Virus record (IMG/VR): IMGVR_UViG_3300049215_000771
Span: 1-64,000 of that record
Length of the DNA: 64,000 nucleotides
Direction: 5' to 3' (one strand)
This document shows positions 5,451 through 55,660 of the stretch, one piece after another. Both the position numbers and the translations under genes were made by a program. Position 1 is the stretch's first letter. Every line of letters begins with the position of its first letter. The notes under the pieces were generated by a model. It did no database searches. It had not been told where the DNA came from and was given only the letters and a program-made list of their open reading frames with translations.

Positions 5451-5825
5451 ATGGTTGAGATTTACAATGTTGGAACGGATGTGCCTTACGACCTGCCGGA
5501 TCAGGATGATCGGTTTGAGTGGCTGGTGTACTGGTACGAGGATGGAGGTTACGACGGCAACGGGGAATGTGTCGGCTACAACAAGGAAGATGGTATGCTG
5601 TACACGAAGAACCTGGGCCACTGCTCGTGTTATGGACCGTTCGACGGTTGGGGAACTGACTGCACGAAAGTCACGCCGCACGAGTTCTTCCGGGAAAAGG
5701 ACTCGATCTTCGATCCTGATAACATGGATGTCATCAAGAAGAAGGTCGCAGAACTGATCCCTTGGGCCGTCCCTTCGGGGCCGGTCTTCAAGGATAAGTT
5801 CAACTTGCTCGGAGAAGCGAAGTAA
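5451..5825 (+). CDS. hypothetical phage protein (HCSCYGP motif)
   Basis: AAGGAG RBS; acidic/aromatic phage-type ORF. Confidence 0.7.
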   Translation: MVEIYNVGTDVPYDLPDQDDRFEWLVYWYEDGGYDGNGECVGYNKEDGMLYTKNLGHCSCYGPFDGWGTDCTKVTPHEFFREKDSIFDPDNMDVIKKKVAELIPWAVPSGPVFKDKFNLLGEAK

Positions 5826-5930
5826 CGATTCGGCGGTCCTAGACTGGCGTGGAAGTGGCCCTTCGGGGCCACGCCACACGATTCGGCGGTCCTAGACTGG
5901 CGTGGAAGTGGCCCTTCGGGGCCACGCCAC
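5825..5930 (+). repeat. perfect 2 x 53-bp tandem repeat with a TTCG hairpin
   Basis: ACGATTCGGCGGTCCTAGACTGGCGTGGAAGTGGCCCTTCGGGGCCACGCCAC twice. Confidence 0.9.
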
Positions 5931-5984
5931 AAATCCTACGGGTTATTCTAGGTTACACCCGTAGCTGTTTTGCGAGACATCAAC

Positions 5985-6221
5985 ATGATGAACGGGCCGG
6001 ATTACAGCGACAACTGCCCCGATTGTGGGGAACCGCTGGCAGTACACCGGGGAGTGGTCCCCCTGACTGCTACAAGGTACTGTGCGAGTTGTAACTGGTG
6101 CGAAGTCACTGACGGCGACCGCCAGGCCAACGCCAGGGAAGATTGGTACGTTCGGAATGTGCGAAACAGGGAAGACAACAAGATCGTCATGGATGAAGAC
6201 GATGAATATGATGGTGGGTAG
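5985..6221 (+). CDS. Zn-ribbon hypothetical protein
   Basis: CPDC...CASC. Confidence 0.55.
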   Translation: MMNGPDYSDNCPDCGEPLAVHRGVVPLTATRYCASCNWCEVTDGDRQANAREDWYVRNVRNREDNKIVMDEDDEYDGG

Positions 6222-6336
6222 CTCAGTGGTAGAGCGACGTAAAAAGTCTCAGCGCCAATTTGTCCTTCGGGAATGCTTAGTTGGGATTACATGCCATTTA
6301 AGCCGTAGGTCGCAGGTTCAACTCCTGCCCCACCAG
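6212..6336 (+). ncRNA. tRNA-scaffolded Y-RNA-like chimera, copy 3
   Basis: TGGTGGG/CCCACCA acceptor, TAGCTCAGTGGTAGAGC D arm, GCAGG-TTCAACT-CCTGC T arm; same ~50-nt core as copy 1. Confidence 0.75.
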
Positions 6337-8520: not shown

Positions 8521-8819
8521 GCGACTTCAGCTACTTCAAAGGCTTCCCCAAACTTCCCAACCGGGACAAGGGCGATCTGCCGAACCTCCCGATTCGATGG
8601 CGGCTCTCGACGGACGCCTTCGGTGTTGATGCTGAAGATATTCCTCAGCAACAGGCCGAGAAGTTGTTGGAGCAAGCTGGTCTGAAGCATATGTTGGTTT
8701 TGGTGTTGCTCCAGGTTGGCGGTCGCCAAAGTGGAAGCATCAAAATCGACGATGACAAGACCAGGACCACGAAGTTTCTGCACTACGGCCCGAAGGAGAG
8801 AAAATGCTCGTCGGTGTAG
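8517..8819 (+). CDS. hypothetical protein
   Basis: ATGA coupling, GAGG RBS. Confidence 0.55.
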
Positions 8820-9277
8820 TGATGGGATCGCAGTCGGATTGGGAGACAATGAAGGGGGCGACCGAGATATTGGATATGCTCGTCATTCCCTACGAAGCCA
8901 AGGTGGTGTCGGCACACAGGACGCCTGACCTGATGTTTCAATATGCGGAGAGGGCTGAAGGAAGGTTGGATGCCATTATCGCCGGGGCAGGAGGAGCAGC
9001 CCATTTGCCTGGGATGCTGGCCTCAAAAACACAAGTGCCTGTCTACGGCGTGCCGGTTCAATCGAAAGCCTTCAATGGCCTGGATTCGCTGTTGTCGATT
9101 GTGCAGATGCCCGCTGGTGTTGGAGTAGCGACGTTCGCTGTGGGCCATGTTGGAGCAAGGAATGCGGCGCTGCATGTGGCACAATGGTTGGCGAAGTTCG
9201 ATGACAGGATCGCCGTGAAGTTGAGGAATTTTCGGGCCAACCAGATGGAAATGGTGTTGAGGGCGAAGTTGGAGTGA
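8804..9277 (+). CDS. purE: N5-carboxyaminoimidazole ribonucleotide mutase
   Basis: VMGSQSDW...VSAHRTP...[13 protein letters not shown]...[13 protein letters not shown]. Confidence 0.96.
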
Positions 9278-10553: not shown

Positions 10554-10979
10554 ATGGCCTTGAGGGTTAGTACGATGGATGCCCCTGTGACCGAAGTTGT
10601 GTCGGCTCCCGTTGAGCCTGCGAAACGTCATCCGAGTGCGCTGGCTCCGCTGGCGGCTTTCAACGACCAGAAAACGCTGCTGAAGTTCTACCCGCAGGAA
10701 GATGGTTCCTGCCTGGTGGTCTTCTGGTGCCCCGGCTGTAAAGAAACCCACACCTACAAGGTGGGAACCTTCATGGGCGTCGGCGAGTGGGGCTTCATGA
10801 AGGACAAGCCGGTGAGGATGGACGGCTGGAAGTTCAACTGTGATCTCGAACATCCGACCTTCAGCCCGTCGCTCAAATACGACAAGTGCCATCTGTGGGT
10901 CGAGAATGGCGTCATCGACTATGGATACGACTGCGACCACAAGCTGAAGGGCAAGAAAGTGCCCCTGGAACTGTTCTGA
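10554..10979 (+). CDS. DUF6527-like Cys/His protein
   Basis: FWCPGC...W.FN.D...PTFSPSL...CH..V.NG.I.Y..DC.H.L.G. Confidence 0.7.
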   Translation: MALRVSTMDAPVTEVVSAPVEPAKRHPSALAPLAAFNDQKTLLKFYPQEDGSCLVVFWCPGCKETHTYKVGTFMGVGEWGFMKDKPVRMDGWKFNCDLEHPTFSPSLKYDKCHLWVENGVIDYGYDCDHKLKGKKVPLELF

Positions 10980-11593
10980 TGCTTCCCGATAAGCTGAACC
11001 TATATTTCGACGGATCGTGCGGGCCTAACAACCCAGGCGGCACGGCAGGATATGCGTGGCGACTGGTGGACCCCGATACCGGCAAAGTATTGGCCCAGGA
11101 CTGCGGCGAAGTATGCCGAGGCCCAACGGCGACGAACAATATCGGCGAGTGGGGCGCTGTCAAGGCGGGGCTGGAACACCTTGCCGAGAAGGGCTGGAAG
11201 GGAGAACTCAATATCCGAGGCGACAGCCAGTTGGTGATATACCAGCTAATCGGCAAGTATAAATGTCGCAAAGACACATTGATTCCCTTCTACGAGGCGT
11301 GTATGCTTATCTTGGAAGGCTGGACGTGGGACGCTCACTGGATTCCAAGGGAGCAAAACGATGAATGCGACCGAATGTCCAAGCAAGCCTACGCCCCTGG
11401 CAGACGAGGCACAGGAGATATACAACGACCTGTGGAACGATTGCAAAGAGATTCGGGAGATCATGGAGGAGTACGGTCTGAGTTGGTCGGACGTGGCAAG
11501 AAGTCTCGAAGAACACGGGCCACACAGCGGAATGGACCTGGACAAACCCAACCGCTGCCGGGTGAGGAGACGCCAGAAGTGGCGTTCGATTGA
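10979..11593 (+). CDS. rnhA: ribonuclease HI-like protein (second paralogue)
   Basis: LYFDGSC...ATNNIGEW...GDSQLVIYQL.G.YK...WIPREQNDECD. Confidence 0.88.
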   Translation: MLPDKLNLYFDGSCGPNNPGGTAGYAWRLVDPDTGKVLAQDCGEVCRGPTATNNIGEWGAVKAGLEHLAEKGWKGELNIRGDSQLVIYQLIGKYKCRKDTLIPFYEACMLILEGWTWDAHWIPREQNDECDRMSKQAYAPGRRGTGDIQRPVERLQRDSGDHGGVRSELVGRGKKSRRTRATQRNGPGQTQPLPGEETPEVAFD

Positions 11594-11600
11594 TGACTGA
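11361..11600 (+). CDS. RSIDD-tagged hypothetical protein
   Basis: Ends RRRQKWRSIDD*; overlaps the RNase H tail in another frame. Confidence 0.6.
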   Translation: MNATECPSKPTPLADEAQEIYNDLWNDCKEIREIMEEYGLSWSDVARSLEEHGPHSGMDLDKPNRCRVRRRQKWRSIDD

Positions 11601-11901
11601 ACAGGAACATGATGCCAGCCTGGGTCGTATGATACGACATTTCGCCAGGTTTCACGGCGGGGCGATCCTGACGTGTTTTATTCTGATCTGTTTCTTCGGC
11701 GATGGCCAGAAAACAGGACACTGGATCATGTGGACTAGCGTAGGCTGCGGGGCGGTAATCACCTATCTGTTGTGGAGAAGCGACAGAAGGCGTCGGAAGG
11801 AAGAAGAAATGTCCGGTGGGTGTGACGGAAGCACAAGGGTCTACGAAGCCCTTAGAACAGGTTCGACTCCTGTACCGGATACTGAAAGGAAAGATGGTTG
11901 A
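11593..11901 (+). CDS. membrane hypothetical protein
   Basis: Two hydrophobic segments; reads through tRNA-Arg. Confidence 0.5.
   Translation: MTEQEHDASLGRMIRHFARFHGGAILTCFILICFFGDGQKTGHWIMWTSVGCGAVITYLLWRSDRRRRKEEEMSGGCDGSTRVYEALRTGSTPVPDTERKDG
11811..11881 (+). tRNA. tRNA-Arg(ACG)
   Basis: AGGGT-CTACGAA-GCCCT; T loop TTCGACT. Confidence 0.85.
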
Positions 11902-12097
11902 CTACAACTACCCTTTCGTTTGCCCTCACTGCGGTAGCAAATGGTCGGCGGCTGAGTTTCTGGAGGAGCATATCTGGTATGACCACCAGGATGTAACGAA
12001 GGCTGAGATCGCCGATTGGTTCGCCAAGGAGTACAACCTCGATCCTGACGAAGTAAGCCAGGAAGATGTTGACCGGGAGTGGGAAGGTCGAGGATGA
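11894..12097 (+). CDS. C2H2 zinc-finger-like protein
   Basis: FVCPHCG......LEEHIWYDH. Confidence 0.6.
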   Translation: MVDYNYPFVCPHCGSKWSAAEFLEEHIWYDHQDVTKAEIADWFAKEYNLDPDEVSQEDVDREWEGRG

Positions 12098-12351
12098 AAC
12101 TTTTCTGCGTCAGTTGTTTGATTCGGAACACCAGACAGGCCATGTCTGGTTACATCTTCGCTGACGATGAAGAAGAAGCCCGGAAGATATTTCGACAATA
12201 CCTTCCAGTTGAACATGACATCGTGGTAGACGAGATCGAACAGGAGAAGGGTCTGCTGACGATGGTGACGAACGACCGGGCGGTACTGTTGAAGTATTAC
12301 CCGAAAACAACCGATAGGTGTACTGGAGGCACACAGCCCTGCGAAGGCTGA
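12094..12351 (+). CDS. hypothetical protein
   Basis: ATGA coupling. Confidence 0.5.
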   Translation: MKLFCVSCLIRNTRQAMSGYIFADDEEEARKIFRQYLPVEHDIVVDEIEQEKGLLTMVTNDRAVLLKYYPKTTDRCTGGTQPCEG

Positions 12352-12379
12352 GGAGCGGGTTCGACTCCCGCATCGGTTA
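12309..12379 (+). tRNA. tRNA-Arg(GCG)
   Basis: CAGCC-CTGCGAA-GGCTG; AACCGAT/ATCGGTT acceptor. Confidence 0.82.
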
Positions 12380-12380
12380 C

Positions 12381-12468
12381 TGCGACCAAATGCCAGAAGG
12401 GATTACATTCATTTGATAAGTGAAATGCTGGCCTAGCCAGCTAGTCTCTTCACCAGTTGTTGGTCGCA
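12381..12468 (+). ncRNA. free-standing Y-RNA-like element A (no tRNA body)
   Basis: TGCGACCAA/TTGGTCGCA terminal stem; ATGCCA-GAAGGGA-TTACAT...AG-TCTCTTC-ACCAGTTG; T-run follows. Confidence 0.7.
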
Positions 12469-12492
12469 ATTTTCCAACACGGGGCCGGAACA

Positions 12493-12834
12493 GTGGCGGT
12501 TAAAAGGAAAACGGTCGAATGTGAGTGTGGCGAAGTTTTCAACGACCTGCGCACTCATCTCCTGGGCAACCTAATCTTTGGTCCCTGGAAGGCCAAAACG
12601 CATCGTGTGAGGGAAACAAAGTCCAAAAGCGGTGGCGATATACTTGTCGCCGTGTGGGAACGAACAGTAGAATGTGGGAAGTGCGGCGGCGAACTGCTGA
12701 AGGAAAAACGACAGTACGAGTTGTCACCACCAGCAGATGTGACAAAACCAGAACCAATCAGCTACTACAGCAGTAGGGAGTTGATTGTCCGAGGGTCCGA
12801 GGGAGCAGATGGAATAATTCGGATGACGGCGTAG
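12493..12834 (+). CDS. Zn-ribbon hypothetical protein
   Basis: VECECGE...VECGKCG; start uncertain. Confidence 0.5.
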   Translation: MAVKRKTVECECGEVFNDLRTHLLGNLIFGPWKAKTHRVRETKSKSGGDILVAVWERTVECGKCGGELLKEKRQYELSPPADVTKPEPISYYSSRELIVRGSEGADGIIRMTA

Positions 12835-12844
12835 ATAGATTGAT

Positions 12845-12915
12845 GCCCGGTGGGTGTGACGGAAGCACGCAGCGCCTCGAACGCTGTAGAACGGGTTCGA
12901 CTCCTGTACCGGGTG
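12845..12915 (+). tRNA. tRNA-Arg(TCG), C33 variant
   Basis: CAGCG-CCTCGAA-CGCTG. Confidence 0.8.
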
Positions 12916-12988
12916 CTAAAGGTCGAGCATTTAAGTTCCTACGAGTAATCGTAGGCAGACTCTTTCTCGACCTTGAATCAGCGAGTGT

Positions 12989-13078
12989 ATTGTGGTCCAA
13001 ATGCTAAGGTGGGATTACATCTTTTCCAACAAGAAGAAGCCGAAAGGCAGTCTCATCACCAATTTGTTGGACCACAAT
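12989..13078 (+). ncRNA. free-standing Y-RNA-like element B (no tRNA body)
   Basis: ATTGTGGTCCAA/TTGGACCACAAT terminal stem; ATGCTAA-GGTGGGA-TTACAT...GCC-GAAA-GGC-AG-TCTCATC-ACCAATTTG; T-run follows. Confidence 0.72.
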
Positions 13079-13105
13079 TTTTCAACATGAAAGGTAGTGT
13101 GCTAT

Positions 13106-13183
13106 ATGGCTAAAGAAAAATCTCCGAAGAAGGAAAAAAAGAAGCCGAAGAAGAAGGACAAGGACAAGAAGCCGAGCAAGTAA
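13106..13183 (+). CDS. 25-aa Lys-rich peptide
   Basis: MAKEKSPKKEKKKPKKKDKDKKPSK*; AAGG upstream; stop abuts the next tRNA. Confidence 0.55.
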   Translation: MAKEKSPKKEKKKPKKKDKDKKPSK

Positions 13184-13277
13184 GCCCTTGTAGCTCAATT
13201 GGTAGAGCATCTGACTCTTGTGCTAGAAAGCACCCAAGTTAATCAGAGGGTTCAGGGTTCGAGTCCCTGCGAGGGCA
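13184..13277 (+). tRNA. tRNA-Lys(CTT) (or Asn GTT) with 21-nt insertion in the anticodon loop
   Basis: Normal acceptor, D and T arms; TCTGA-CTCTT[GTGCTAGAAAGCACCCAAGTT]AA-TCAGA; A73 favours Lys. Confidence 0.75.
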
Positions 13278-13279
13278 CT

Positions 13280-13707
13280 GCGAAGGAGAACTGGCGTTAC
13301 CTTAACCATCAGGGAGGCTGTTCGATTGTACTTCGCTGTCACAAAACCTCACGCTTCGGCAATGGGGGACAATGCTCGTGTAGCGAAGAAGGCGTAAGCC
13401 CACTGGAAACGGTGAGAGTCCCGTAGCTGTCCATGCTAATGGTCATGGAGAAATTCAGTAGTCCTTGGTCGGAAATCAAGGATGATGCTAGTTGGCGGGG
13501 TGACGGCCCACCAAGGCTGGACCGCATGGACCGGCACATGCAGCTTCGGCGAAGAAATTGTGTCGCCACGAGAGCTAATCGACAATCTCTGGACAAGGCC
13601 CATTCAGGGCGCAAGCCTATCTTCGGATGGCGAGTGTACTCTGACCCGTAGGGATGAAGCGGACTCCTGCCCCGGACTGATTCCGCAGAGAGGGGCCGAT
13701 TAGCAAT
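13280..13707 (+). ncRNA. candidate large structured ncRNA (~430 nt)
   Basis: No convincing ORF; many tetraloop hairpins (GGC-GTAA-GCC, CACTG-GAAA-CGGTG, TCCTTGGT/ATCAAGGA, GGC-GCAA-GCC, TATC-TTCG-GATG). Confidence 0.5.
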
Positions 13708-13709
13708 AT

Positions 13710-13783
13710 GGTGGTGTAGGTTAGCTGGCTAAACCGCCTCTCTCATAAGGAGGAGATCGTGGGTTCGAGTCCCACCACCACTA
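13710..13783 (+). tRNA. tRNA-Met/Ile2(CAT)
   Basis: CCTCT-CTCATAA-GGAGG. Confidence 0.85.
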
Positions 13784-13788
13784 CTACT

Positions 13789-14031
13789 ATGGACGACAAA
13801 ATCTTCAAGGTGCCGGACGCAGGCGAAAACGTCGTTATCCGAATCTTGCCGCCGAAGAAGGTTATGCCGTTTTATGCGACAAGGGTTCACAGGCTGCATC
13901 AGAAGAACAAAGCCTGCCCGATCTGTGAGTACGAGAAGCAATTGTCGGAAAAGCAGAAAGCCAATGGCGCAGGTGGAAGGAAGAAGAAGCGCTGGAGGAA
14001 TATCGACGAGCCTTGGGAGGCTTCGTCGTAG
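13789..14031 (+). CDS. gp32-like SSB N-terminal fragment with RSIDD-type tag
   Basis: GENVVIRILPP...H...CPICEY then KKKRWRNIDEPWEASS*. Confidence 0.6.
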   Translation: MDDKIFKVPDAGENVVIRILPPKKVMPFYATRVHRLHQKNKACPICEYEKQLSEKQKANGAGGRKKKRWRNIDEPWEASS

Positions 14032-14059
14032 GTCGCCCTTAGCACGAGGAGGAGTCCGA

Positions 14060-14599
14060 ATGAAAACGATTTGGTCTGCTTTTTCCATCGGGATCATCTT
14101 GATCTTGCTGGGTTGTCATCCGACACCCGCCCCCAATGCGACGGCTCAACCGGCCAAGGCAGCACCGGCTGCGGCTGGCGGGCAGAACGCCGTCGAGGAG
14201 CAAGGCAAGTATGTGAATTCGGCGAGCGCCAGGCTCGTCAAACTCATCAACCTGGGCAACGAGGCCGGCTTCAAGTTGCCGCATCACTCGTTCAGCGGCG
14301 GTGGGGGTTGGCTGTCTTCTGGTGAGGACAAGTGGGTGTCGCTGTACACCGTGCGGTTGGAGTCCACCAAGGACTACCGATTCCTGGCGGCGGGCGACAT
14401 GGATGCGAAGGTGTTGAACCTTCAGGTCTGCAACGTGGACGGCAAGGTGTTGGCGAACGATACTGACAATGACAGTCAGGCCGTGCTGAACTTCACGCCG
14501 AAGCAGACGGATCGGTACACCATCAAGATCAGGCTCAGGTCGTCGAAAGGCGGCGAGCAAGCGTTCTGTTTCGCCATGATGATGGAACGCAAACGGTAA
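14060..14599 (+). CDS. putative lipoprotein with PPC-like beta domain
   Basis: Signal peptide ending LLGC; AGDMDAKVLNLQV...F.P....Y.I.I. Confidence 0.65.
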   Translation: MKTIWSAFSIGIILILLGCHPTPAPNATAQPAKAAPAAAGGQNAVEEQGKYVNSASARLVKLINLGNEAGFKLPHHSFSGGGGWLSSGEDKWVSLYTVRLESTKDYRFLAAGDMDAKVLNLQVCNVDGKVLANDTDNDSQAVLNFTPKQTDRYTIKIRLRSSKGGEQAFCFAMMMERKR

Positions 14600-14630
14600 A
14601 CTCACTGCTCGCAGTGAGTTTCACTGCGAG

Positions 14631-14702
14631 GGGCGTTTAGCTCAGTGGTAGAGCGCCTGGATCACACCCAGGAGGCCGCTGGTTCAATCCCAGCAACGCC
14701 CA
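14631..14702 (+). tRNA. tRNA-Val(CAC)
   Basis: Cloverleaf; CCTGG-ATCACAC-CCAGG. Confidence 0.9.
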
Positions 14703-14779
14703 CTTCCGATGATACGCTGTAGCGTGTCGTCAGGCTGAAACAACAGCGTATTGGCCGCAATGCGACCGATGGGAAGTTA

Positions 14780-14904
14780 GGCCGGGTAGTGTAACGGTAG
14801 CACGGGTAAAAGCAGTCTCAGCGCCAATTTGTCCTACGGGAATGCTTAGTTGGGATTACATCCATTACCAGGACCAAGTACAGGTTCAATTCCTGTCCCG
14901 GCCT
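14780..14904 (+). ncRNA. tRNA-scaffolded Y-RNA-like chimera, copy 4
   Basis: GGCCGGG/CCCGGCC acceptor, D and T arms; core identical to copy 1. Confidence 0.75.
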
Positions 14905-14920
14905 CTGTAGGAACACAACG

Positions 14921-15130
14921 ATGAAGGTTTGCGATGCCTGTGGTTGTTCTGATGCCAAGCATCAGGAAGTCGGCGGTGTCGGGGTGGAAGTCAAAGGCTA
15001 CCATCACCAGCATCATACTCACCGTGGAAAGCCCTGGTATTGGACTCTGGATTTGTGCCCGAAGTGTGCAGGTCAATTGAAGGATGAACTTGATGCTGTA
15101 ATTCGGACTTTCAAGGAAGGTGGAAGCTAG
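14921..15130 (+). CDS. Zn-finger hypothetical protein
   Basis: CDAC...DLCPKC. Confidence 0.6.
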   Translation: MKVCDACGCSDAKHQEVGGVGVEVKGYHHQHHTHRGKPWYWTLDLCPKCAGQLKDELDAVIRTFKEGGS

Positions 15131-15285
15131 GTGGCGGAACCAGACGCACCACTGACAAGAACGCAGGTGGCGGTACGCTAACCCATCATGTATGTCCGGG
15201 GAGGGTGTCGGCTGTAGCCTCGTACCCCTGCATGGTGGTGTCCCCGACAGGACTGTACTTTGTAGGTTGGACTCCTACCCTAGCA
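15126..15285 (+). ncRNA. tRNA-like RNA with ~110-nt central insertion
   Basis: GCTAGG/CCTAGC acceptor, Leu-type TGGCGGAA..AGACGC D arm, GTAGG-TTGGACT-CCTAC T arm; insert hairpin CCATCATGTA/TGCATGGTGG. Confidence 0.55.
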
Positions 15286-15299
15286 CTGGAATCATTTAT

Positions 15300-15369
15300 T
15301 GCGGGGGCGCTGGGCCGCAGGCAGGTCTTTGAAGCCAGCCGTGGAGAGTTCGATCCTCTCACCCGCTGC
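15300..15369 (+). tRNA. degenerate tRNA-Gln(TTG)
   Basis: CTTTGAA loop, GAGAG-TTCGATC-CTCTC T arm, imperfect stems. Confidence 0.5.
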
Positions 15370-15380
15370 TTGGAGAAGTG

Positions 15381-15680
15381 ATGGCAACCATCAAGATTGA
15401 CGAACTCAGGCAATGGGTTCAACAATACAAGGATGACGAAATCATCAGCGTCGGCCAGGCTGGTGCTATCAAGGCGATGGATTACTTCCTTGAAGTTTTC
15501 GGTCGTCATGGTGATCTGGTTGATGGCGGCGGCGTGCTGGTGACGAAATCGGCTCAAAACGAAACTCGCCGTTGTATCGAAATCCTCAACGCCTTCATGG
15601 GCAAGATGTCGTTGTTGGCGCTGATGAGTCTCAGCGACGAGGAACGACAGAAGGCATTGTTTGGGGATGACGATGACTAG
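15381..15680 (+). CDS. hypothetical protein
   Basis: GGAG RBS. Confidence 0.6.
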   Translation: MATIKIDELRQWVQQYKDDEIISVGQAGAIKAMDYFLEVFGRHGDLVDGGGVLVTKSAQNETRRCIEILNAFMGKMSLLALMSLSDEERQKALFGDDDD

Positions 15681-15912
15681 GCATGATGAGTTCACCCATA
15701 CCATTTCAAGTGACAATGCCCCGGAACGACTGAAGGGCAAGATCGTCAAAGCTGTCCTTACCGAAGGACAGCTTTCTTTCGAGATAGACATGCCCGACGA
15801 CCCCACTCCCAATGAGTTGGGATATTTCAAATGGTTCACTGGAGAATTGGTGGACAAGTTGAAATCCCAAACCGGCATCGGCATGACCTGTAGGGGATTG
15901 GAGAAGAAATAG
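15673..15912 (+). CDS. hypothetical protein
   Basis: Overlapping start in gene chain. Confidence 0.55.
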   Translation: MTRHDEFTHTISSDNAPERLKGKIVKAVLTEGQLSFEIDMPDDPTPNELGYFKWFTGELVDKLKSQTGIGMTCRGLEKK

Positions 15913-15918
15913 ACAGAT

Positions 15919-15991
15919 TCCCAGGTAGCTCAGTTGGTAGAGCGGCTGACTGTTAATCAGCATGTCGGGGGTTCGAGTCCCTCCCTGGGAG
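15919..15991 (+). tRNA. tRNA-Asn(GTT)
   Basis: Canonical cloverleaf; GCTGA-CTGTTAA-TCAGC. Confidence 0.95.
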
Positions 15992-15993
15992 CT

Positions 15994-16665
15994 ATGATGA
16001 AAGTTAATCAACACCTTGCCTGGACGGAAAAATACGCCAAGATTTCCAATAAGGTGTATCCAACGGAGTTGCTGGTCAGAATTCTAGCTGGCGGCAATTA
16101 CCCCAGGATGAAGATCAAAACCAGTCTGACTGGTAAGGCGCTCGATGTTGGGTGCGGTGATGGGCGTAATTTCGGCCTCCTGAAAGATGTAGGCTTCAAA
16201 GTCTACGGCACAGAGATCACCGAGGGCATCGTGTCCGTTCTGCGGGCTGCATATCCAGATGTTGAATTGGCTGTCGCCTTCAATCACTCCTTGCCCTACC
16301 CTGATGGATTTTTCGATTGCATTGTTGCGGTTCATTCCTGCTACTATCTCGAAGATGGCGTAAAATTCGCTCAGGTTGTCAACGAGTTCAAAAGAGTGCT
16401 GAGGCCGGGCGGGTTGTTCGTAGGAACCATACCCGACACTAGGAACAGTGTGCAAAAAAATGCCGTAATACACCCCGACATGGAGTGTGTGATTACAAGC
16501 GATCCATTTGGTTTGCGAAATGGATGTAGGATGCAGTTGGCAAATTCCGAAGAACGGGTGCATAACTTGTTGGAGCCGGAATTCAACGATGTGTCGGTGG
16601 GGTCGTTTCACGACAACTATTTTGGCTCGGTGGTATCCGGGTATATGTTCGTCGCATACTCATGA
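15994..16665 (+). CDS. class I SAM-dependent methyltransferase
   Basis: ALDVGCGDGRN...LPYPDGFFD...RVLRPGG. Confidence 0.88.
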   Translation: MMKVNQHLAWTEKYAKISNKVYPTELLVRILAGGNYPRMKIKTSLTGKALDVGCGDGRNFGLLKDVGFKVYGTEITEGIVSVLRAAYPDVELAVAFNHSLPYPDGFFDCIVAVHSCYYLEDGVKFAQVVNEFKRVLRPGGLFVGTIPDTRNSVQKNAVIHPDMECVITSDPFGLRNGCRMQLANSEERVHNLLEPEFNDVSVGSFHDNYFGSVVSGYMFVAYS

Positions 16666-16982
16666 AATACAAAGTTCACAAATGCTGTCAGTCTGCTAGT
16701 GGCGGCAGCCATGTTACGATCTATGACGCCGACCTGGAGTTCACGGTTAATCGGGGCGATATTCAAGTCATTCTCCCTCCAGGGCAAGAAGCTGCCGTGG
16801 ACGTGCAAGAAGCTGCCGAGGCGATCAAGAAAGGCGCAGAAACAGCATTGACGCCTCGTGGGGTTGGTGCGATAATCAAACTTAGTCGGGTCGTGATACA
16901 TATGGTGGATTTCAAGCCCAGGAAGTTCGAGCAGTACACGACCGAAGAACTGGATCGCATCTGTGAGGGCGGTCTGCTTTGA
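16662..16982 (+). CDS. hypothetical protein (possible EF-G domain IV/S5-fold resemblance)
   Basis: AIKKGAETAL...V.IHMVD...F spacing recalls EF-G domain IV; weak. Confidence 0.45.
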   Translation: MKYKVHKCCQSASGGSHVTIYDADLEFTVNRGDIQVILPPGQEAAVDVQEAAEAIKKGAETALTPRGVGAIIKLSRVVIHMVDFKPRKFEQYTTEELDRICEGGLL

Positions 16983-19495: not shown

Positions 19496-20425
19496 ATGCT
19501 CAAGATAGAACCAACCTACAATCACGTCCGGCATCTCATTCGGACCCGACCCGGCATTATCATCACGAATGCTTGCAACCTTGCCTGTGGCGGGTGCTAC
19601 GCCCAATGCGGTAAGTTCTCCAAGGACAAGCTGTGGTTTATTTCCTTGGATCAGTTCAGGGAGAACCTGGAATATATCGCCAAATATATGTACCAGGGTA
19701 AAGTCGAGTTGTTGAACGGGGAGGTAGTCGATATAAACCCGGAACGGCACGGTATCGACATGATCGGGGGCGAGCCTTCCATACACCCGGAATGGGAGAA
19801 GATTTGGGAGCTAATGACTGACGAATACAAGTCGTTGAAGTTTTTGGTTTCCACCAACGGGCGGGTGACATTCCCGAAAGCCGACAACGTGGGTTTGCAT
19901 CTTGACTACAAAACGAAAGATACACCTTCCCAGCATGAGTTTGTCTCAACACTTGTGGCCCCGATTGATGTTGTTGGTATTCAGGACCGTGGTTACTACT
20001 GGAAAACTGCACAAACAGATTGCGGTATCTGGAAGTCGTTGGGTTGTGTAAATCCAATCTACAAGAACCAGATTTCGCTTTGTTCGGTTGCTTCAAGTTG
20101 GAACGATCTTCTTGATCTGGACCTGGGATGGCCGTTGACGCCGGGCGGGAACCCGTTCTCGAAGTTGACCGACAAGGACGTGCGAGAGAAAGCCAGCAAG
20201 GTTTGTTATCGTTGTGGTTGGTCGAAGAAGATGAACCTGCCAGAAGACCAGCGTTCGGAAGGTTACGACCTGGTGAGCGCAACGAACCTGGAAACCTTGA
20301 CTCAAAATGGAAGAAACAAACCCTACAAACTCATCTACAGGGAGGGGGATGAGATCAAGGTTGGCGAATTGAAGGGTTCCAGGGAACTGGTGCAATTGGA
20401 AGTCAGGAAGAAGATGGCCGGCTAG
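19496..20425 (+). CDS. radical SAM protein
   Basis: CNLACGGC (CxxxCxxC), GGEP, STNG. Confidence 0.85.
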   Translation: MLKIEPTYNHVRHLIRTRPGIIITNACNLACGGCYAQCGKFSKDKLWFISLDQFRENLEYIAKYMYQGKVELLNGEVVDINPERHGIDMIGGEPSIHPEWEKIWELMTDEYKSLKFLVSTNGRVTFPKADNVGLHLDYKTKDTPSQHEFVSTLVAPIDVVGIQDRGYYWKTAQTDCGIWKSLGCVNPIYKNQISLCSVASSWNDLLDLDLGWPLTPGGNPFSKLTDKDVREKASKVCYRCGWSKKMNLPEDQRSEGYDLVSATNLETLTQNGRNKPYKLIYREGDEIKVGELKGSRELVQLEVRKKMAG

Positions 20426-25614: not shown

Positions 25615-25716
25615 GGGCGGGTAGCTCAGTGGCAGAGCGGCGATGACGCTGGACGGTTTTATAGTTGCCGGTTGCAGCTAATCGCAAGGTCGCTGGTTCA
25701 AATCCAGCCCCGCCCA
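25615..25716 (+). ncRNA. tRNA-like RNA with extended anticodon arm
   Basis: GGGCGGG/CCCGCCC, canonical D and T arms; GCGAT..ATCGC encloses ~36 nt instead of 7. Confidence 0.65.
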
Positions 25717-27216: not shown

Positions 27217-27314
27217 GGGAGCGTGGTGTAAAGGTAGCACACGAGACTTATAATCTCGGCCAAACGGTAGCGCCTGATTAGCGCTAGGTGAGGGTTCAAG
27301 TCCTTCCGCTCCTA
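27217..27314 (+). tRNA. tRNA-Ile(TAT) with oversized variable region
   Basis: CGAGA-CTTATAA-TCTCG; ~31-nt variable region with TAGCGC/GCGCTA hairpin. Confidence 0.75.
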
Positions 27315-34404: not shown

Positions 34405-34773
34405 ATGAGGCATATGATGCACGCTAAGTTGGTGTACGAACACGCCGGTCGTCCCACTTGGACGATCTGTGATGTTATCTTGTACGAGCCGAACGACGAG
34501 ACGGCGAAGGTTATTGCCGTGTTCACGCAGCTTGATGCCCACCGGGGCGTGAGCATCACCAACTCCGTCGAGAGCGCCTGTGCCGCTTTCTGTGAAGATC
34601 GCAACGTATACCCTGACCAGTGTGTTTTCATCGAGCGGTATGAACATTCGCCCGAAGACCTGGACATGATTTTTCTCGATGAGTATGGCCAGAATCCTCG
34701 CTGGAAACGTCTTGCAAAGGAGCAATCGGCGGGTATACTAGCTGTTTTGCCCAAACCTAGCCTCGTGGTGTAA
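34405..34773 (+). CDS. hypothetical protein
   Basis: G.SITN..E.......F.E.Y......P.W motif. Confidence 0.6.
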   Translation: MRHMMHAKLVYEHAGRPTWTICDVILYEPNDETAKVIAVFTQLDAHRGVSITNSVESACAAFCEDRNVYPDQCVFIERYEHSPEDLDMIFLDEYGQNPRWKRLAKEQSAGILAVLPKPSLVV

Positions 34774-34888
34774 CGGTAGCACAACGGTCCTCTGAAAAGG
34801 GATAGTCTCGACACTATTTGTCCTTCGGGAATGCCGTTGGGATTACATTCATAATCCGTGTGTCCTGGTTCGAGTCCAGGCGAGGCGA
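34759..34888 (+). ncRNA. tRNA-scaffolded Y-RNA-like chimera, copy 5
   Basis: GCCTCG/CGAGGC acceptor, D and T arms; AGTCTCGAC-ACTATTTG-TCC-TTCG-GGA-ATGCC-GTTGGGA-TTACAT; residual TTCATAA-TCCGT. Confidence 0.75.
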
Positions 34889-55503: not shown

Positions 55504-55585
55504 GGGGTTATAGCTTAATGGAAGAGTGGCGAGGTAAGGCCCAAGTGGTCCCTCGCAGGTAGGGGTTCGACTCCCCTTAGCTCCA
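55504..55585 (+). ncRNA. tRNA-like RNA with enlarged anticodon loop
   Basis: GGGGTTA/TAGCTCC (Ala-like G3:U70), AGGGG-TTCGACT-CCCCT; GCGAGG..CCTCGC encloses 16 nt. Confidence 0.6.
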
Positions 55586-55660
55586 CTGAATGAAAGGCAT
55601 CCTGATACTTCTGATTCTCTCCCTAATCATCGCCATCACCGCAATCCTGACGAGGAAAAA

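What the first reader, a model, noticed from the sequence alone, without database searches (positions are those of the whole stretch)
13280..13707. ~430-nt hairpin-rich non-coding block inside the tRNA array
Seen: lies exactly between two tRNAs, has no credible ORF and has many GNRA/UUCG-capped stems. Established: large phage ncRNAs such as GOLLD and ROOL sit in tRNA arrays. I cannot assign it to a family. Inference: a large ncRNA released by processing of the flanking tRNAs.
Basis: partly seen in the sequence, partly recalled or inferred. Interest (0 to 1): 0.6.

Follow-up and report, generated by a model that had tools for sequence, protein, structure and literature searches.

The report
Phage RNA mimicking 16S helix 11
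A 431-base non-coding stretch between two tRNA genes of a half-megabase phage carries a near-perfect copy of the tip of one hairpin (helix 11) of bacterial 16S ribosomal RNA; isolated copies of that hairpin turn up in over a hundred other phage sequences, so it may be a previously undescribed way for phages to engage a ribosome-building factor.

Summary
Window 13279-13709 fills the gap between a tRNA (13184-13278) and tRNA-Met (13710-13784). Its ORFs do not look coding. It has 7 GNRA/UNCG-capped hairpins against a genome mean of 1.2. It matches no Rfam family, including GOLLD, ROOL, RNase P, tmRNA and introns.

Its core, 13487-13517, is the apical part of 16S rRNA helix 11. It is 30/31 identical to a Gemmataceae 16S and 26/31 to E. 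coli, and the match is significant genome-wide. Two 12-nt words equal to the tips of helices 8 and 15 flank it in the rRNA order and at near-rRNA spacing.

The same phage carries a second tRNA-flanked rRNA mimic, of 23S H42-H44. Isolated helix 11 pieces occur in 105 IMG/VR contigs and in cultured phages (ZCEC13, Omar), usually in a covarying three-way junction. Isolated 23S H43/H44 pieces sit beside tRNAs in large phages.

My reading is that tRNA processing releases an RNA that presents helix 11 to a host factor, most likely ribosomal protein uS17. That mechanism is inferred, not shown. I found no homologue of the whole block, so its overall fold is untested. I found no published description.

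The parts
13184..13278 (+). Upstream tRNA (anticodon region reads CTT, probably Lys) with a 24-nt insert in the anticodon loop. Its 3' end defines the 5' end of the block. No CCA is encoded.
   Evidence: ARAGORN; Rfam tRNA 62.2 bits with a 24-nt insertion
13279..13709 (+). The non-coding block (431 nt), the putative processed RNA.
   Evidence: No Rfam family. ORFs non-coding by codon usage and family scans. Tetraloop-hairpin count in the top 0.08% of genome windows. Sequence identical in independent assemblies.
13354..13366 (+). 13-nt word identical to Gemmataceae 16S positions 371-383 (the 5' strand of helix 15). It is out of rRNA order and overlaps a UUCG/GCAA hairpin.
   Evidence: By itself this is at the edge of chance (about 0.03 expected).
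13401..13414 (+). GAAA-capped 5-bp hairpin. Its 12-nt core equals the tip of E. coli 16S helix 8 (155-166) and lies on the rRNA diagonal, 7 nt off the helix 11 anchor.
13463..13481 (+). 7-bp hairpin with loop CGGAA, immediately 5' of the helix 11 mimic. It resembles 23S H84 and the L31-leader hairpin, but not significantly.
   Evidence: cmscan 16.3 bits, E 4-7; compared with a Planctomycetota 23S
13485..13519 (+). Mimic of the apical part of 16S rRNA helix 11 (E. coli 247-277). The core is 13487-13517. The loop reads GUGACGG where rRNA has GUAACGG.
   Evidence: 30/31 to Gemmataceae 16S, 26/31 to E. coli. nhmmer genome-wide E 0.0025. 35/37 to Acidobacteria-like 16S genes. The CM of the phage helix 11 family scores 31.5 bits, E 1.7e-5.
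13607..13618 (+). GCAA-capped hairpin whose 12 nt equal the tip of 16S helix 15 (E. coli 376-387, and three Gemmataceae 16S). It lies on the rRNA diagonal, 9 nt off the anchor.
13617..13630 (+). UUCG-capped 5-bp hairpin.
13710..13784 (+). tRNA-Met(CAT). Its 5' end, the RNase P site, defines the 3' end of the block.
   Evidence: ARAGORN; Rfam 67.3 bits

Best explanation
Window 13279-13709 is a non-coding RNA gene embedded in the tRNA array of a megaphage of about 0.53-0.67 Mb from moss metagenomes. The host is probably a planctomycete (Gemmataceae).

The RNA is transcribed with the tRNAs and cut out by the enzymes that mature them: RNase P at tRNA-Met, and 3' processing after the upstream tRNA. 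Both steps are inferred.

The functional core is a copy of the apical part of 16S rRNA helix 11. It is flanked, in rRNA order and at near-rRNA spacing, by hairpins equal to the tips of helices 8 and 15. The connecting rRNA helices are replaced by short tetraloop hairpins. The RNA therefore looks like a stripped-down imitation of the lower 5' domain of 16S rRNA.

I propose that it works by molecular mimicry. It offers helix 11 to a host factor that normally recognises it during 30S assembly. The likeliest factor is the primary assembly protein uS17, possibly with the neighbouring 5'-domain proteins bS20 and bS16. The RNA would then either titrate that factor or recruit it.

It is one of at least two such tRNA-flanked rRNA mimics in this phage. 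It belongs to a broader habit of phages of carrying isolated helix 11 and 23S H43/H44 copies, for which I found no published description.
For: Shown:
- Non-coding and hairpin-rich.
- The helix 11 apex is conserved at 30/31 while the rest of the block is unalignable to 16S. Uniform decay of a captured gene would not give this pattern.
- 12-nt words of the helix 8 and helix 15 tips lie within 20 nt of the anchored rRNA diagonal. This happens in 3/3000 and 1/3000 shuffles. 10 and 11 of 7098 real windows of the phage have such a word on one side, and 0 have one on both sides.
- A second block (G000 484119-484001, - strand) matches Rfam LSU positions 1083-1154 (H42-H44) at 33 bits, E 3.5e-8. It lies between tRNA-Leu and an unannotated tRNA-Ser.
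- These two are the only rRNA-like stretches in 533 kb.
- 105 IMG/VR contigs carry an isolated helix 11 piece of 41-90 nt and no 16S gene.
- In most of them it sits in a three-way junction, and 8 of 22 predicted pairs show compensatory changes.
- One actinophage-type copy keeps h7+h11+h12 and scores 71 bits on the SSU model.
- Cultured phages carry it too. ZCEC13's copy differs from its host E. coli's helix 11 by pair-preserving changes.
- One 11-kb contig has the piece between two tRNAs of an array that also holds GOLLD.
- 25 of 26 IMG/VR contigs with the 23S H43/H44 core hold only an isolated piece. Wherever a tRNA was called nearby it has the same orientation, and in several cases it lies 3-10 nt away.
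- RNA-library contigs match 13487-13673 and 13011-13307 without a difference.

Against: - I found no homologue of the whole block. There is therefore no covariation for anything outside helix 11.
- The MFE is ordinary.
- The CM of the small phage family matches only the 31-nt apex. The helix 11 lower stem and the third helix are not recognisable here.
- Apart from the anchored-diagonal test, rRNA words in the block are not unusual: 7% of genome windows carry as many.
- GNRA hairpins with G+C stems are generic, so the helix 8 match, which equals E. coli but not the candidate hosts, may be convergence.
- No binding partner has been tested. The phage encodes no S17 or L11 of its own, so the partner would have to be a host protein.
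- The RNA-library contigs cannot separate transcript from DNA carry-over. The depth peak over 13487-13518 is cross-mapping of real 16S rRNA.
Confidence: 0.4

Rival explanations
1. The RNA is an rRNA mimic, but its partner is not uS17. It could be a decoy for a host or competitor factor that attacks or inspects ribosomal RNA (a nuclease, an ADP-ribosyltransferase or a modification enzyme), or a landing pad for a phage protein.
For: The same phage also mimics 23S H42-H44, the GTPase-associated centre. That site binds uL11 and uL10 and, from my memory of the literature, is the target of an rRNA-ADP-ribosylating toxin. The shared theme of two unrelated rRNA sites in tRNA arrays fits a general 'protect or imitate the ribosome' role as well as it fits r-protein capture. 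The mimic loop often reads GUGAYGG instead of the rRNA GUAAYGG (21 of 105 copies and this block). This hints at a requirement that is not simply 'look like the host rRNA'.
Against: I know of no factor that targets helix 11 other than the ribosomal proteins. The actinophage copies keep exactly h7+h11+h12, which is close to the uS17 contact set quoted.
Confidence: 0.2
2. The block is a cis-acting structured spacer. It exists to fold, space or protect the long untranslated tRNA-array transcript, for example as a processing scaffold or as protection from Rho or RNases. The helix 11 copy is simply a stable hairpin borrowed for that purpose.
For: It lies inside a 30-kb array with no promoter or terminator of its own. 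It is dense in very stable tetraloop hairpins. The other gaps in the array are of similar length.
Against: Most other gaps of this array hold small ORFs with normal codon usage, so spacers are not generally needed. This idea does not explain why the same 31-47 nt of 16S recur in more than 100 phages that have no tRNA nearby. It also does not explain why the apex is held at 30/31 identity.
Confidence: 0.12
3. The block is a decaying relic of a piece of host 16S rRNA gene picked up by illegitimate recombination, with no present function.
For: Helix 8, 11 and 15 words occur in rRNA order and spacing, which suggests descent from a real 16S 5' domain. Phages do pick up host DNA.
Against: Identity is 97% over 31 nt and random elsewhere, whereas neutral decay is uniform. 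The replaced parts are not random sequence but compact tetraloop hairpins. Independent phage lineages keep the same segment inside covarying stems.
Confidence: 0.1
4. The block is a small protein-coding gene, the 73-aa ORF 13482-13703 that public pipelines called.
For: Gene callers annotated it on two assemblies.
Against: Its codon-usage score of 0.005 lies at the 2.6th percentile of real coding pieces, while the neighbouring genes score 0.41. It has no Pfam or PHROGs match. I saw no Shine-Dalgarno sequence before it. Its N-terminus is the translation of an rRNA hairpin.
Confidence: 0.03
5. The block is a divergent member of a described large RNA family: GOLLD, ROOL, RNase P RNA, tmRNA, or a group I/II intron.
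For: Its location in a phage tRNA array is the same as for GOLLD and ROOL. A real GOLLD sits in the analogous array of contig L093.
Against: cmscan of the block, alone and with its flanks, at E<=10 returns none of these families. ARAGORN finds no tmRNA. Both flanking tRNAs are complete, so no exon is interrupted.
Confidence: 0.02

Closest known systems
16S rRNA 5' domain (Rfam RF00177, helices 7-15)
   Same: The helix 11 apex is 30/31 identical to a planctomycete 16S. The tips of helices 8 and 15 are present in the same order and within 7-9 nt of the rRNA spacing.
   Different: The block fails the SSU model entirely. It lacks the universal stretches, such as the 340-360 region and the 530 loop. 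The helix 11 lower stem is not kept. The block is 431 nt and flanked by tRNAs in a phage.
Small phage-borne helix 11 elements found here (IMG/VR loci L039-L143; Escherichia phage ZCEC13, Klebsiella phage SBP, Streptomyces phages Omar and Stella, and others)
   Same: The same 27-31-nt apex, and a GUGAYGG loop variant shared with 21 of the 105. They are isolated from any rRNA gene.
   Different: Those elements are about 100-130 nt: an outer stem, a full helix 11 with its lower stem, and a third hairpin or helix 12. They mostly lie far from tRNAs. This block shares only the apex and is four times longer.
Ribosomal-protein leader RNAs (autoregulatory rRNA mimics, e.g. the L10, L1, S15, L31 leaders)
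   Same: The principle: a short RNA that imitates the rRNA site of a ribosomal protein.
   Different: Those are 5' UTRs of the protein's own operon in bacteria. This is a free-standing, tRNA-flanked RNA in a phage that has no S17 or L11 gene. What follows it is a tRNA and then ORFs of unknown function.
GOLLD and ROOL
   Same: Large non-coding RNAs in phage tRNA arrays, presumably released with the tRNAs.
   Different: There is no sequence or structure match. GOLLD and ROOL are not rRNA-like.
Phage T4 stable RNAs 'species 1 and 2' (rnaC, rnaD) in the tRNA cluster (from memory, not checked here)
   Same: Small stable RNAs of unknown function, co-transcribed and co-processed with phage tRNAs.
   Different: I know of no rRNA likeness for them, and I did not compare them here.

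Membership tests
GOLLD (RF02032) / ROOL / other Rfam large RNAs | Match to the family covariance model | tested here: not met
   cmscan at gathering score and at E<=10 finds nothing in 13279-13709. The same tool finds GOLLD at 196 bits in L093, so the test works.
Bacterial SSU rRNA (RF00177) | Match to the whole model or to a closed sub-domain of it | tested here: not met
   No match at E<=10, either in the genome search or when the block is scanned alone. By contrast the phage element L064 reaches 71 bits over h7-h12.
Bacterial SSU rRNA (RF00177) | Helix 11 apical stem-loop sequence and pairing | tested here: met
   30/31 and 26/31 identities; nhmmer E 1e-6 for the block and 0.0025 genome-wide.
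Phage helix 11 three-way-junction elements (model R1, built here) | Helix 11 apex (model positions 31-61) | tested here: met
   31.5 bits, E 1.7e-5 at 13487-13517.
Phage helix 11 three-way-junction elements (model R1, built here) | Helix 11 lower stem, third hairpin and enclosing outer stem | tested here: not met
   The CM alignment stops at the apex. By eye there is only a 3-4-bp AUG/CAU closure and a hairpin on the 5' side instead of the 3' side.
Ribosomal-protein leader (rRNA-mimic autoregulator) | Lies in the 5' UTR of the gene of the protein it binds | tested here: not met
   Downstream are tRNA-Met and then ORFs without family matches. There is no S17 or L11 gene in the phage.
tRNA-array ncRNA released by tRNA processing | Abuts tRNAs on both sides, on the same strand | tested here: met
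tRNA-array ncRNA released by tRNA processing | Discrete RNA with ends at the tRNA borders | not testable with these tools
   Only assembled contigs of the RNA runs were available. They cannot show ends or strand.
Structured RNA (any) | Covariation across homologues | not testable with these tools
   I found no homologue of the block beyond identical copies.

The most novel reading that the evidence does not exclude
Phages of many lineages carry free-standing RNA copies of single ribosomal RNA domains, and these form a new class of phage RNA. The copies seen here are 16S helix 11 (with or without h7/h12) and the 23S H42-H44 GTPase-associated centre. In large phages they are wired into tRNA arrays so that tRNA processing releases them. 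Their proposed role is to capture or redirect host ribosomal or ribosome-directed proteins. The block in this window would be the largest and most elaborate example, imitating three hairpins of the 16S 5' domain at once.
Probability: 0.35. Interest if true: 0.85.

Novelty: new variant of a known kind. Interest (0 to 1): 0.72.

Why it matters
Imitation of rRNA by another RNA is known from bacterial operon leaders that sense their own ribosomal protein. A virus carrying loose copies of rRNA domains would be a different use of the same trick. It would let a phage reach into ribosome assembly, or into whatever else reads those rRNA sites, without encoding a protein.

Helix 11 pieces occur in cultured coliphages and Streptomyces phages, so the idea can be tested at the bench even though this megaphage is uncultured.

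There are also practical consequences. Gene callers translate these elements into spurious 'hypothetical proteins'. And rRNA reads cross-map onto them in metatranscriptomes, as happened here.

Tried and rejected
- RNase P RNA, tmRNA, a group I intron and SRP/6S were considered by eye and rejected. cmscan at E<=10 and ARAGORN give nothing, and both flanking tRNAs are intact.
- Global fold energy is uninformative: z = -0.35.
- Searches for homologues of the block all failed:
  - GenBank phages by blastn.
  - Two exact-word scans of IMG/VR.
  - Neighbour proteins in IMG/VR.
  - A metagenome scan with a phage-flavoured helix 11 pattern, which returned only five genuine 16S genes.
  - The 80-aa downstream protein, which has no relatives.
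  - Relatives of the 179-aa neighbour lie in Gemmataceae chromosomes or in a tRNA-free phage contig.
- The RNA-library depth peak at 13364-13560 is not expression of the block. It is real 16S rRNA contigs overlapping 13487-13518, with rRNA-like loose ends.
- Local alignment of the flanks to the 16S 5' domain is not significant (p 0.06-0.35).
- A position-free count of rRNA 11-mers outside the core is ordinary (7% of windows).
- The H84/L31-leader likeness of hairpin 13463-13481 is not significant.
- I found no other universal rRNA motifs (SRL, 530 loop and others) in the phage.
- Helix 11 and H43/H44 pieces do not co-occur within the fetched IMG/VR loci.
- The phage has no S17 or L11 gene.
- Eight literature searches found no description of phage-borne rRNA-fragment mimics. 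The library is incomplete, so this is weak evidence of novelty.

Full report
**Setting.** The window is the first 64 kb of a 532,729-bp IMG/VR virus record. The same sequence lies on a 673-kb ENA scaffold and in Logan contigs of moss metagenomes. The phage carries at least 56 tRNA genes in two arrays, and 38-39 of them are in this window. A neighbouring 179-aa protein (14060-14599) has its relatives almost only in Gemmataceae/Planctomycetota genomes. A planctomycete host is therefore likely.

**The observation.** The finding sits exactly in the gap between two tRNAs. One is a 95-nt tRNA whose anticodon loop holds a 24-nt insert (13184-13278). The other is tRNA-Met (13710-13784).

- The ORFs inside the gap are 72-91 aa. 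They match no Pfam or PHROGs family.
- By a codon-usage log-odds trained on 113 long ORFs of this phage they score about 0 or below. Real coding pieces average 0.42 and the two genes just downstream score 0.41.
- Public pipelines did call one of these ORFs. I take that call to be spurious.
- The block holds 7 GNRA- or UNCG-capped hairpins. Windows of 431 nt across the phage average 1.24, and only 0.08% of them reach 7.
- The minimum free energy is not unusual (z = -0.35).

**What it is not.** The block matches no Rfam family. This holds at gathering scores, at E<=10 with flanks, and at E<=10 when the block is scanned alone so that truncated matches are allowed. That excludes recognisable GOLLD, ROOL, RNase P RNA, tmRNA, SRP, 6S and introns.

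**The lead.** I laid contigs of three metatranscriptomes and one metagenome on 11000-16900. The RNA runs piled up only on 13487-13518, and the overhanging ends of those contigs read like 16S rRNA. That depth is cross-mapping, not expression. But it showed that the block contains a stretch shared with real 16S rRNA.

**The helix 11 core.**
- BLAST and nhmmer against E. coli 16S and four Gemmataceae/Planctomycetota 16S genes fetched here place window 13487-13517 on 16S positions 247-277 (E. coli numbering), the apical part of helix 11.
- Identities are 26/31 to E. coli and 27-30/31 to the planctomycetes. Acidobacteria-like 16S genes from metagenomes match 35/37, including a few flanking bases.
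- Over the whole 533-kb phage the match has E = 0.0025.
- The rest of the block does not align to 16S by score (p 0.06-0.35 against shuffles).
- So 31 nt are held at about 97% while the surroundings are unrelated. That is not what a neutrally decaying captured gene looks like.

**Collinear landmarks.** Two exact 12-nt words flank the core on nearly the same alignment diagonal as in rRNA. Window 13402-13413 equals the tip of E. coli helix 8. Window 13607-13618 equals the tip of helix 15 in E. coli and in three Gemmataceae. They lie 7 and 9 nt off the helix 11 anchor.

- Words that long within 20 nt of the diagonal occur in 3/3000 and 1/3000 shuffles of the flanks.
- Among 7098 other windows of the phage treated the same way, 10 and 11 have such a word on one side and none has one on both.
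- Two cautions apply. Both words are G+C-stemmed GNRA hairpins, a generic motif, and the helix 8 word matches E. coli rather than the candidate hosts. Also, a position-free count of rRNA 11-mers outside the core is ordinary (7% of windows).

I therefore call the helix 11 mimic solid. The 'skeleton of the 5' domain' reading is probable but not proven.

**A second mimic in the same phage.** The only other rRNA-like stretch in the genome lies in the second tRNA array, on the minus strand at about 484119-484001. Rfam's LSU model aligns it over positions 1083-1154, that is H42-H44, the uL11/uL10-binding GTPase-associated centre. The outer helix is closed and one loop is replaced by a 55-nt insert (33 bits, E 3.5e-8). 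It follows tRNA-Leu(GAG) and is followed by further 23S-like words and by a tRNA-Ser(CGA) that ARAGORN missed. This phage therefore places imitations of two different rRNA protein-binding domains between tRNAs.

**The habit is widespread.**
- A degenerate 27-nt helix 11 pattern hit 105 IMG/VR contigs. Every one holds only 41-90 nt of 16S-like sequence (positions about 245-291, in some reaching helix 12) and no 16S gene.
- Most belong to a few groups of contigs, many from records of about 45-55 kb. In these an outer stem encloses a complete helix 11 and a third hairpin.
- In an alignment of 19 representatives, 8 of 22 predicted pairs keep pairing through changes on both sides, while the apex is invariant.
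- An actinophage-type copy keeps helices 7, 11 and 12 with helices 8-10 deleted, and scores 71 bits on the SSU model. Streptomyces phage Omar has the same arrangement near its genome end.
- Escherichia phage ZCEC13 carries a copy between tail genes, on the opposite strand. Its apex differs from E. coli's own helix 11 by pair-preserving changes, so it is not a fresh capture from that host.
- One 11-kb contig with 17 tRNAs has the piece in a 252-nt gap between two tRNAs, and it has a bona fide GOLLD elsewhere in the same array.
- A pattern for the 23S H43/H44 core hit 26 IMG/VR contigs, 25 of them with an isolated piece only. Most are on contigs of 50-370 kb. Wherever a tRNA was called nearby it has the same orientation, and in four cases it lies only 3-10 nt away.

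**Relation of this block to the small family.** A covariance model built from the small elements finds the window only at 13487-13517 (31.5 bits, E 1.7e-5) and aligns nothing beyond the apex. This block shares the module, including the GUGAYGG loop variant seen in 21 of the 105 copies. It does not share the architecture. I found no homologue of the full 431 nt, so its fold outside the apex rests on single-sequence prediction only.

**Mechanism.**
- Shown: the sequence features above.
- Inferred: co-transcription with the array (no promoter- or terminator-like site in the block) and release by tRNA-processing enzymes.
- Weak support for presence in RNA: RNA-library contigs identical to 13487-13673 and to 13011-13307 exist. 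The latter spans the tRNA, its insert and the first 29 nt of the block. These contigs cannot exclude DNA carry-over or show ends.
- Function: the published contacts of helix 11 are with uS17, a primary 5'-domain assembly protein that also touches helices 7 and 9. bS20 binds helices 6 and 8-10 (PMC4604426, PMC3359968). The actinophage copies retain h7+h11+h12, which fits uS17 best.
- I therefore propose that the RNA binds host uS17, perhaps with its neighbours. I cannot say whether this titrates the protein away from 30S assembly or recruits it.
- The phage has no S17 or L11 gene, so any such partner is a host protein.
- Rivals are a decoy for some other rRNA-directed factor, a cis-acting structural spacer, a functionless relic, and a small protein gene. 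They are weighed in the rival section.

**Novelty.** Eight full-text searches found no description of phage-borne rRNA-fragment mimics. The library is incomplete, so this is not proof. The principle of rRNA mimicry is known from ribosomal-protein leaders, and tRNA-array RNAs are known from GOLLD and ROOL. The combination, the target (helix 11) and the breadth across phages appear new.

**Limits.** Only contigs, not raw reads, of the RNA runs were available. The IMG/VR loci are unannotated.

Noticed in passing
L038:602-720 (- strand) = G000 about 484001-484119, outside the window: A tRNA-flanked mimic of 23S rRNA H42-H44, the uL11/uL10-binding GTPase-associated centre, with a 55-nt insert (Rfam LSU 33 bits, E 3.5e-8). 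It lies between tRNA-Leu(GAG) and a tRNA-Ser(CGA) at L038:138-228 that ARAGORN did not report.
   Followed up: partly
L039-L143 (IMG/VR); L144:2501-2545 (Escherichia phage ZCEC13); L145:580-637 (Streptomyces phage Omar): About 105 viral contigs and several cultured phages carry an isolated 16S helix 11 copy, some with h7/h12. It usually sits in a three-way junction with covarying stems. In GenBank it is unannotated or annotated as a tiny hypothetical protein.
   Followed up: partly
L151-L176 (IMG/VR): 25 of 26 contigs with the 23S H43/H44 core carry only an isolated piece of 36-67 nt. Most are on phage contigs of 50-370 kb. Nearby tRNAs are always in the same orientation, and in several cases lie 3-10 nt away (L153, L156, L162, L166).
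   Followed up: partly
L093:4326-4576 and L093:8407-8841: An 11-kb viral contig with 17 tRNAs has a helix 11 mimic in a 252-nt gap between tRNA-Arg and tRNA-Trp. It also has a GOLLD RNA (196 bits) in the same array.
   Followed up: partly
window 13184-13278, 25615-25716, 27217-27314, 34759-34888, 55504-55586; by eye about 6213-6335: Several tRNAs of this phage carry inserts of roughly 10-60 nt in the anticodon loop. These are too short for group I introns. Three were found only by Rfam and one only by eye. An RNA-library contig (13011-13307) contains the 24-nt insert unspliced.
   Followed up: no
G000 80837-80930, 121393-121540, 491736-491826 (outside the window): ARAGORN reports tRNAs with anticodons TCA (one) and CTA (three). 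These are possible stop-codon suppressors and hint at recoding in part of the genome.
   Followed up: no
window 5826-5931: A tandem duplication of a unit of about 53 nt. Each copy ends in a long G+C hairpin capped by UUCG, just after a small ORF (5452-5826). The area 5501-6281 has the highest tetraloop-hairpin count in the genome (9).
   Followed up: no
window 13487-13518: Genuine 16S rRNA contigs of metatranscriptomes cross-map here and even form chimeric contigs with the phage sequence. This inflates apparent expression and is a trap for read-based analyses.
   Followed up: yes
window 14060-14599: A 179-aa secreted/lipoprotein-like protein whose relatives are chromosomal genes of Gemmataceae and other Planctomycetota (17 genome loci). 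This is the best clue to the host.
   Followed up: partly
window 8804-9277, 10886-11593, 15934-16665, 19496-20425: Genes interspersed in the tRNA array include PurE (AIR carboxylase, E 5e-57), an RNase H-like protein, a SAM methyltransferase and a weak radical-SAM match.
   Followed up: no
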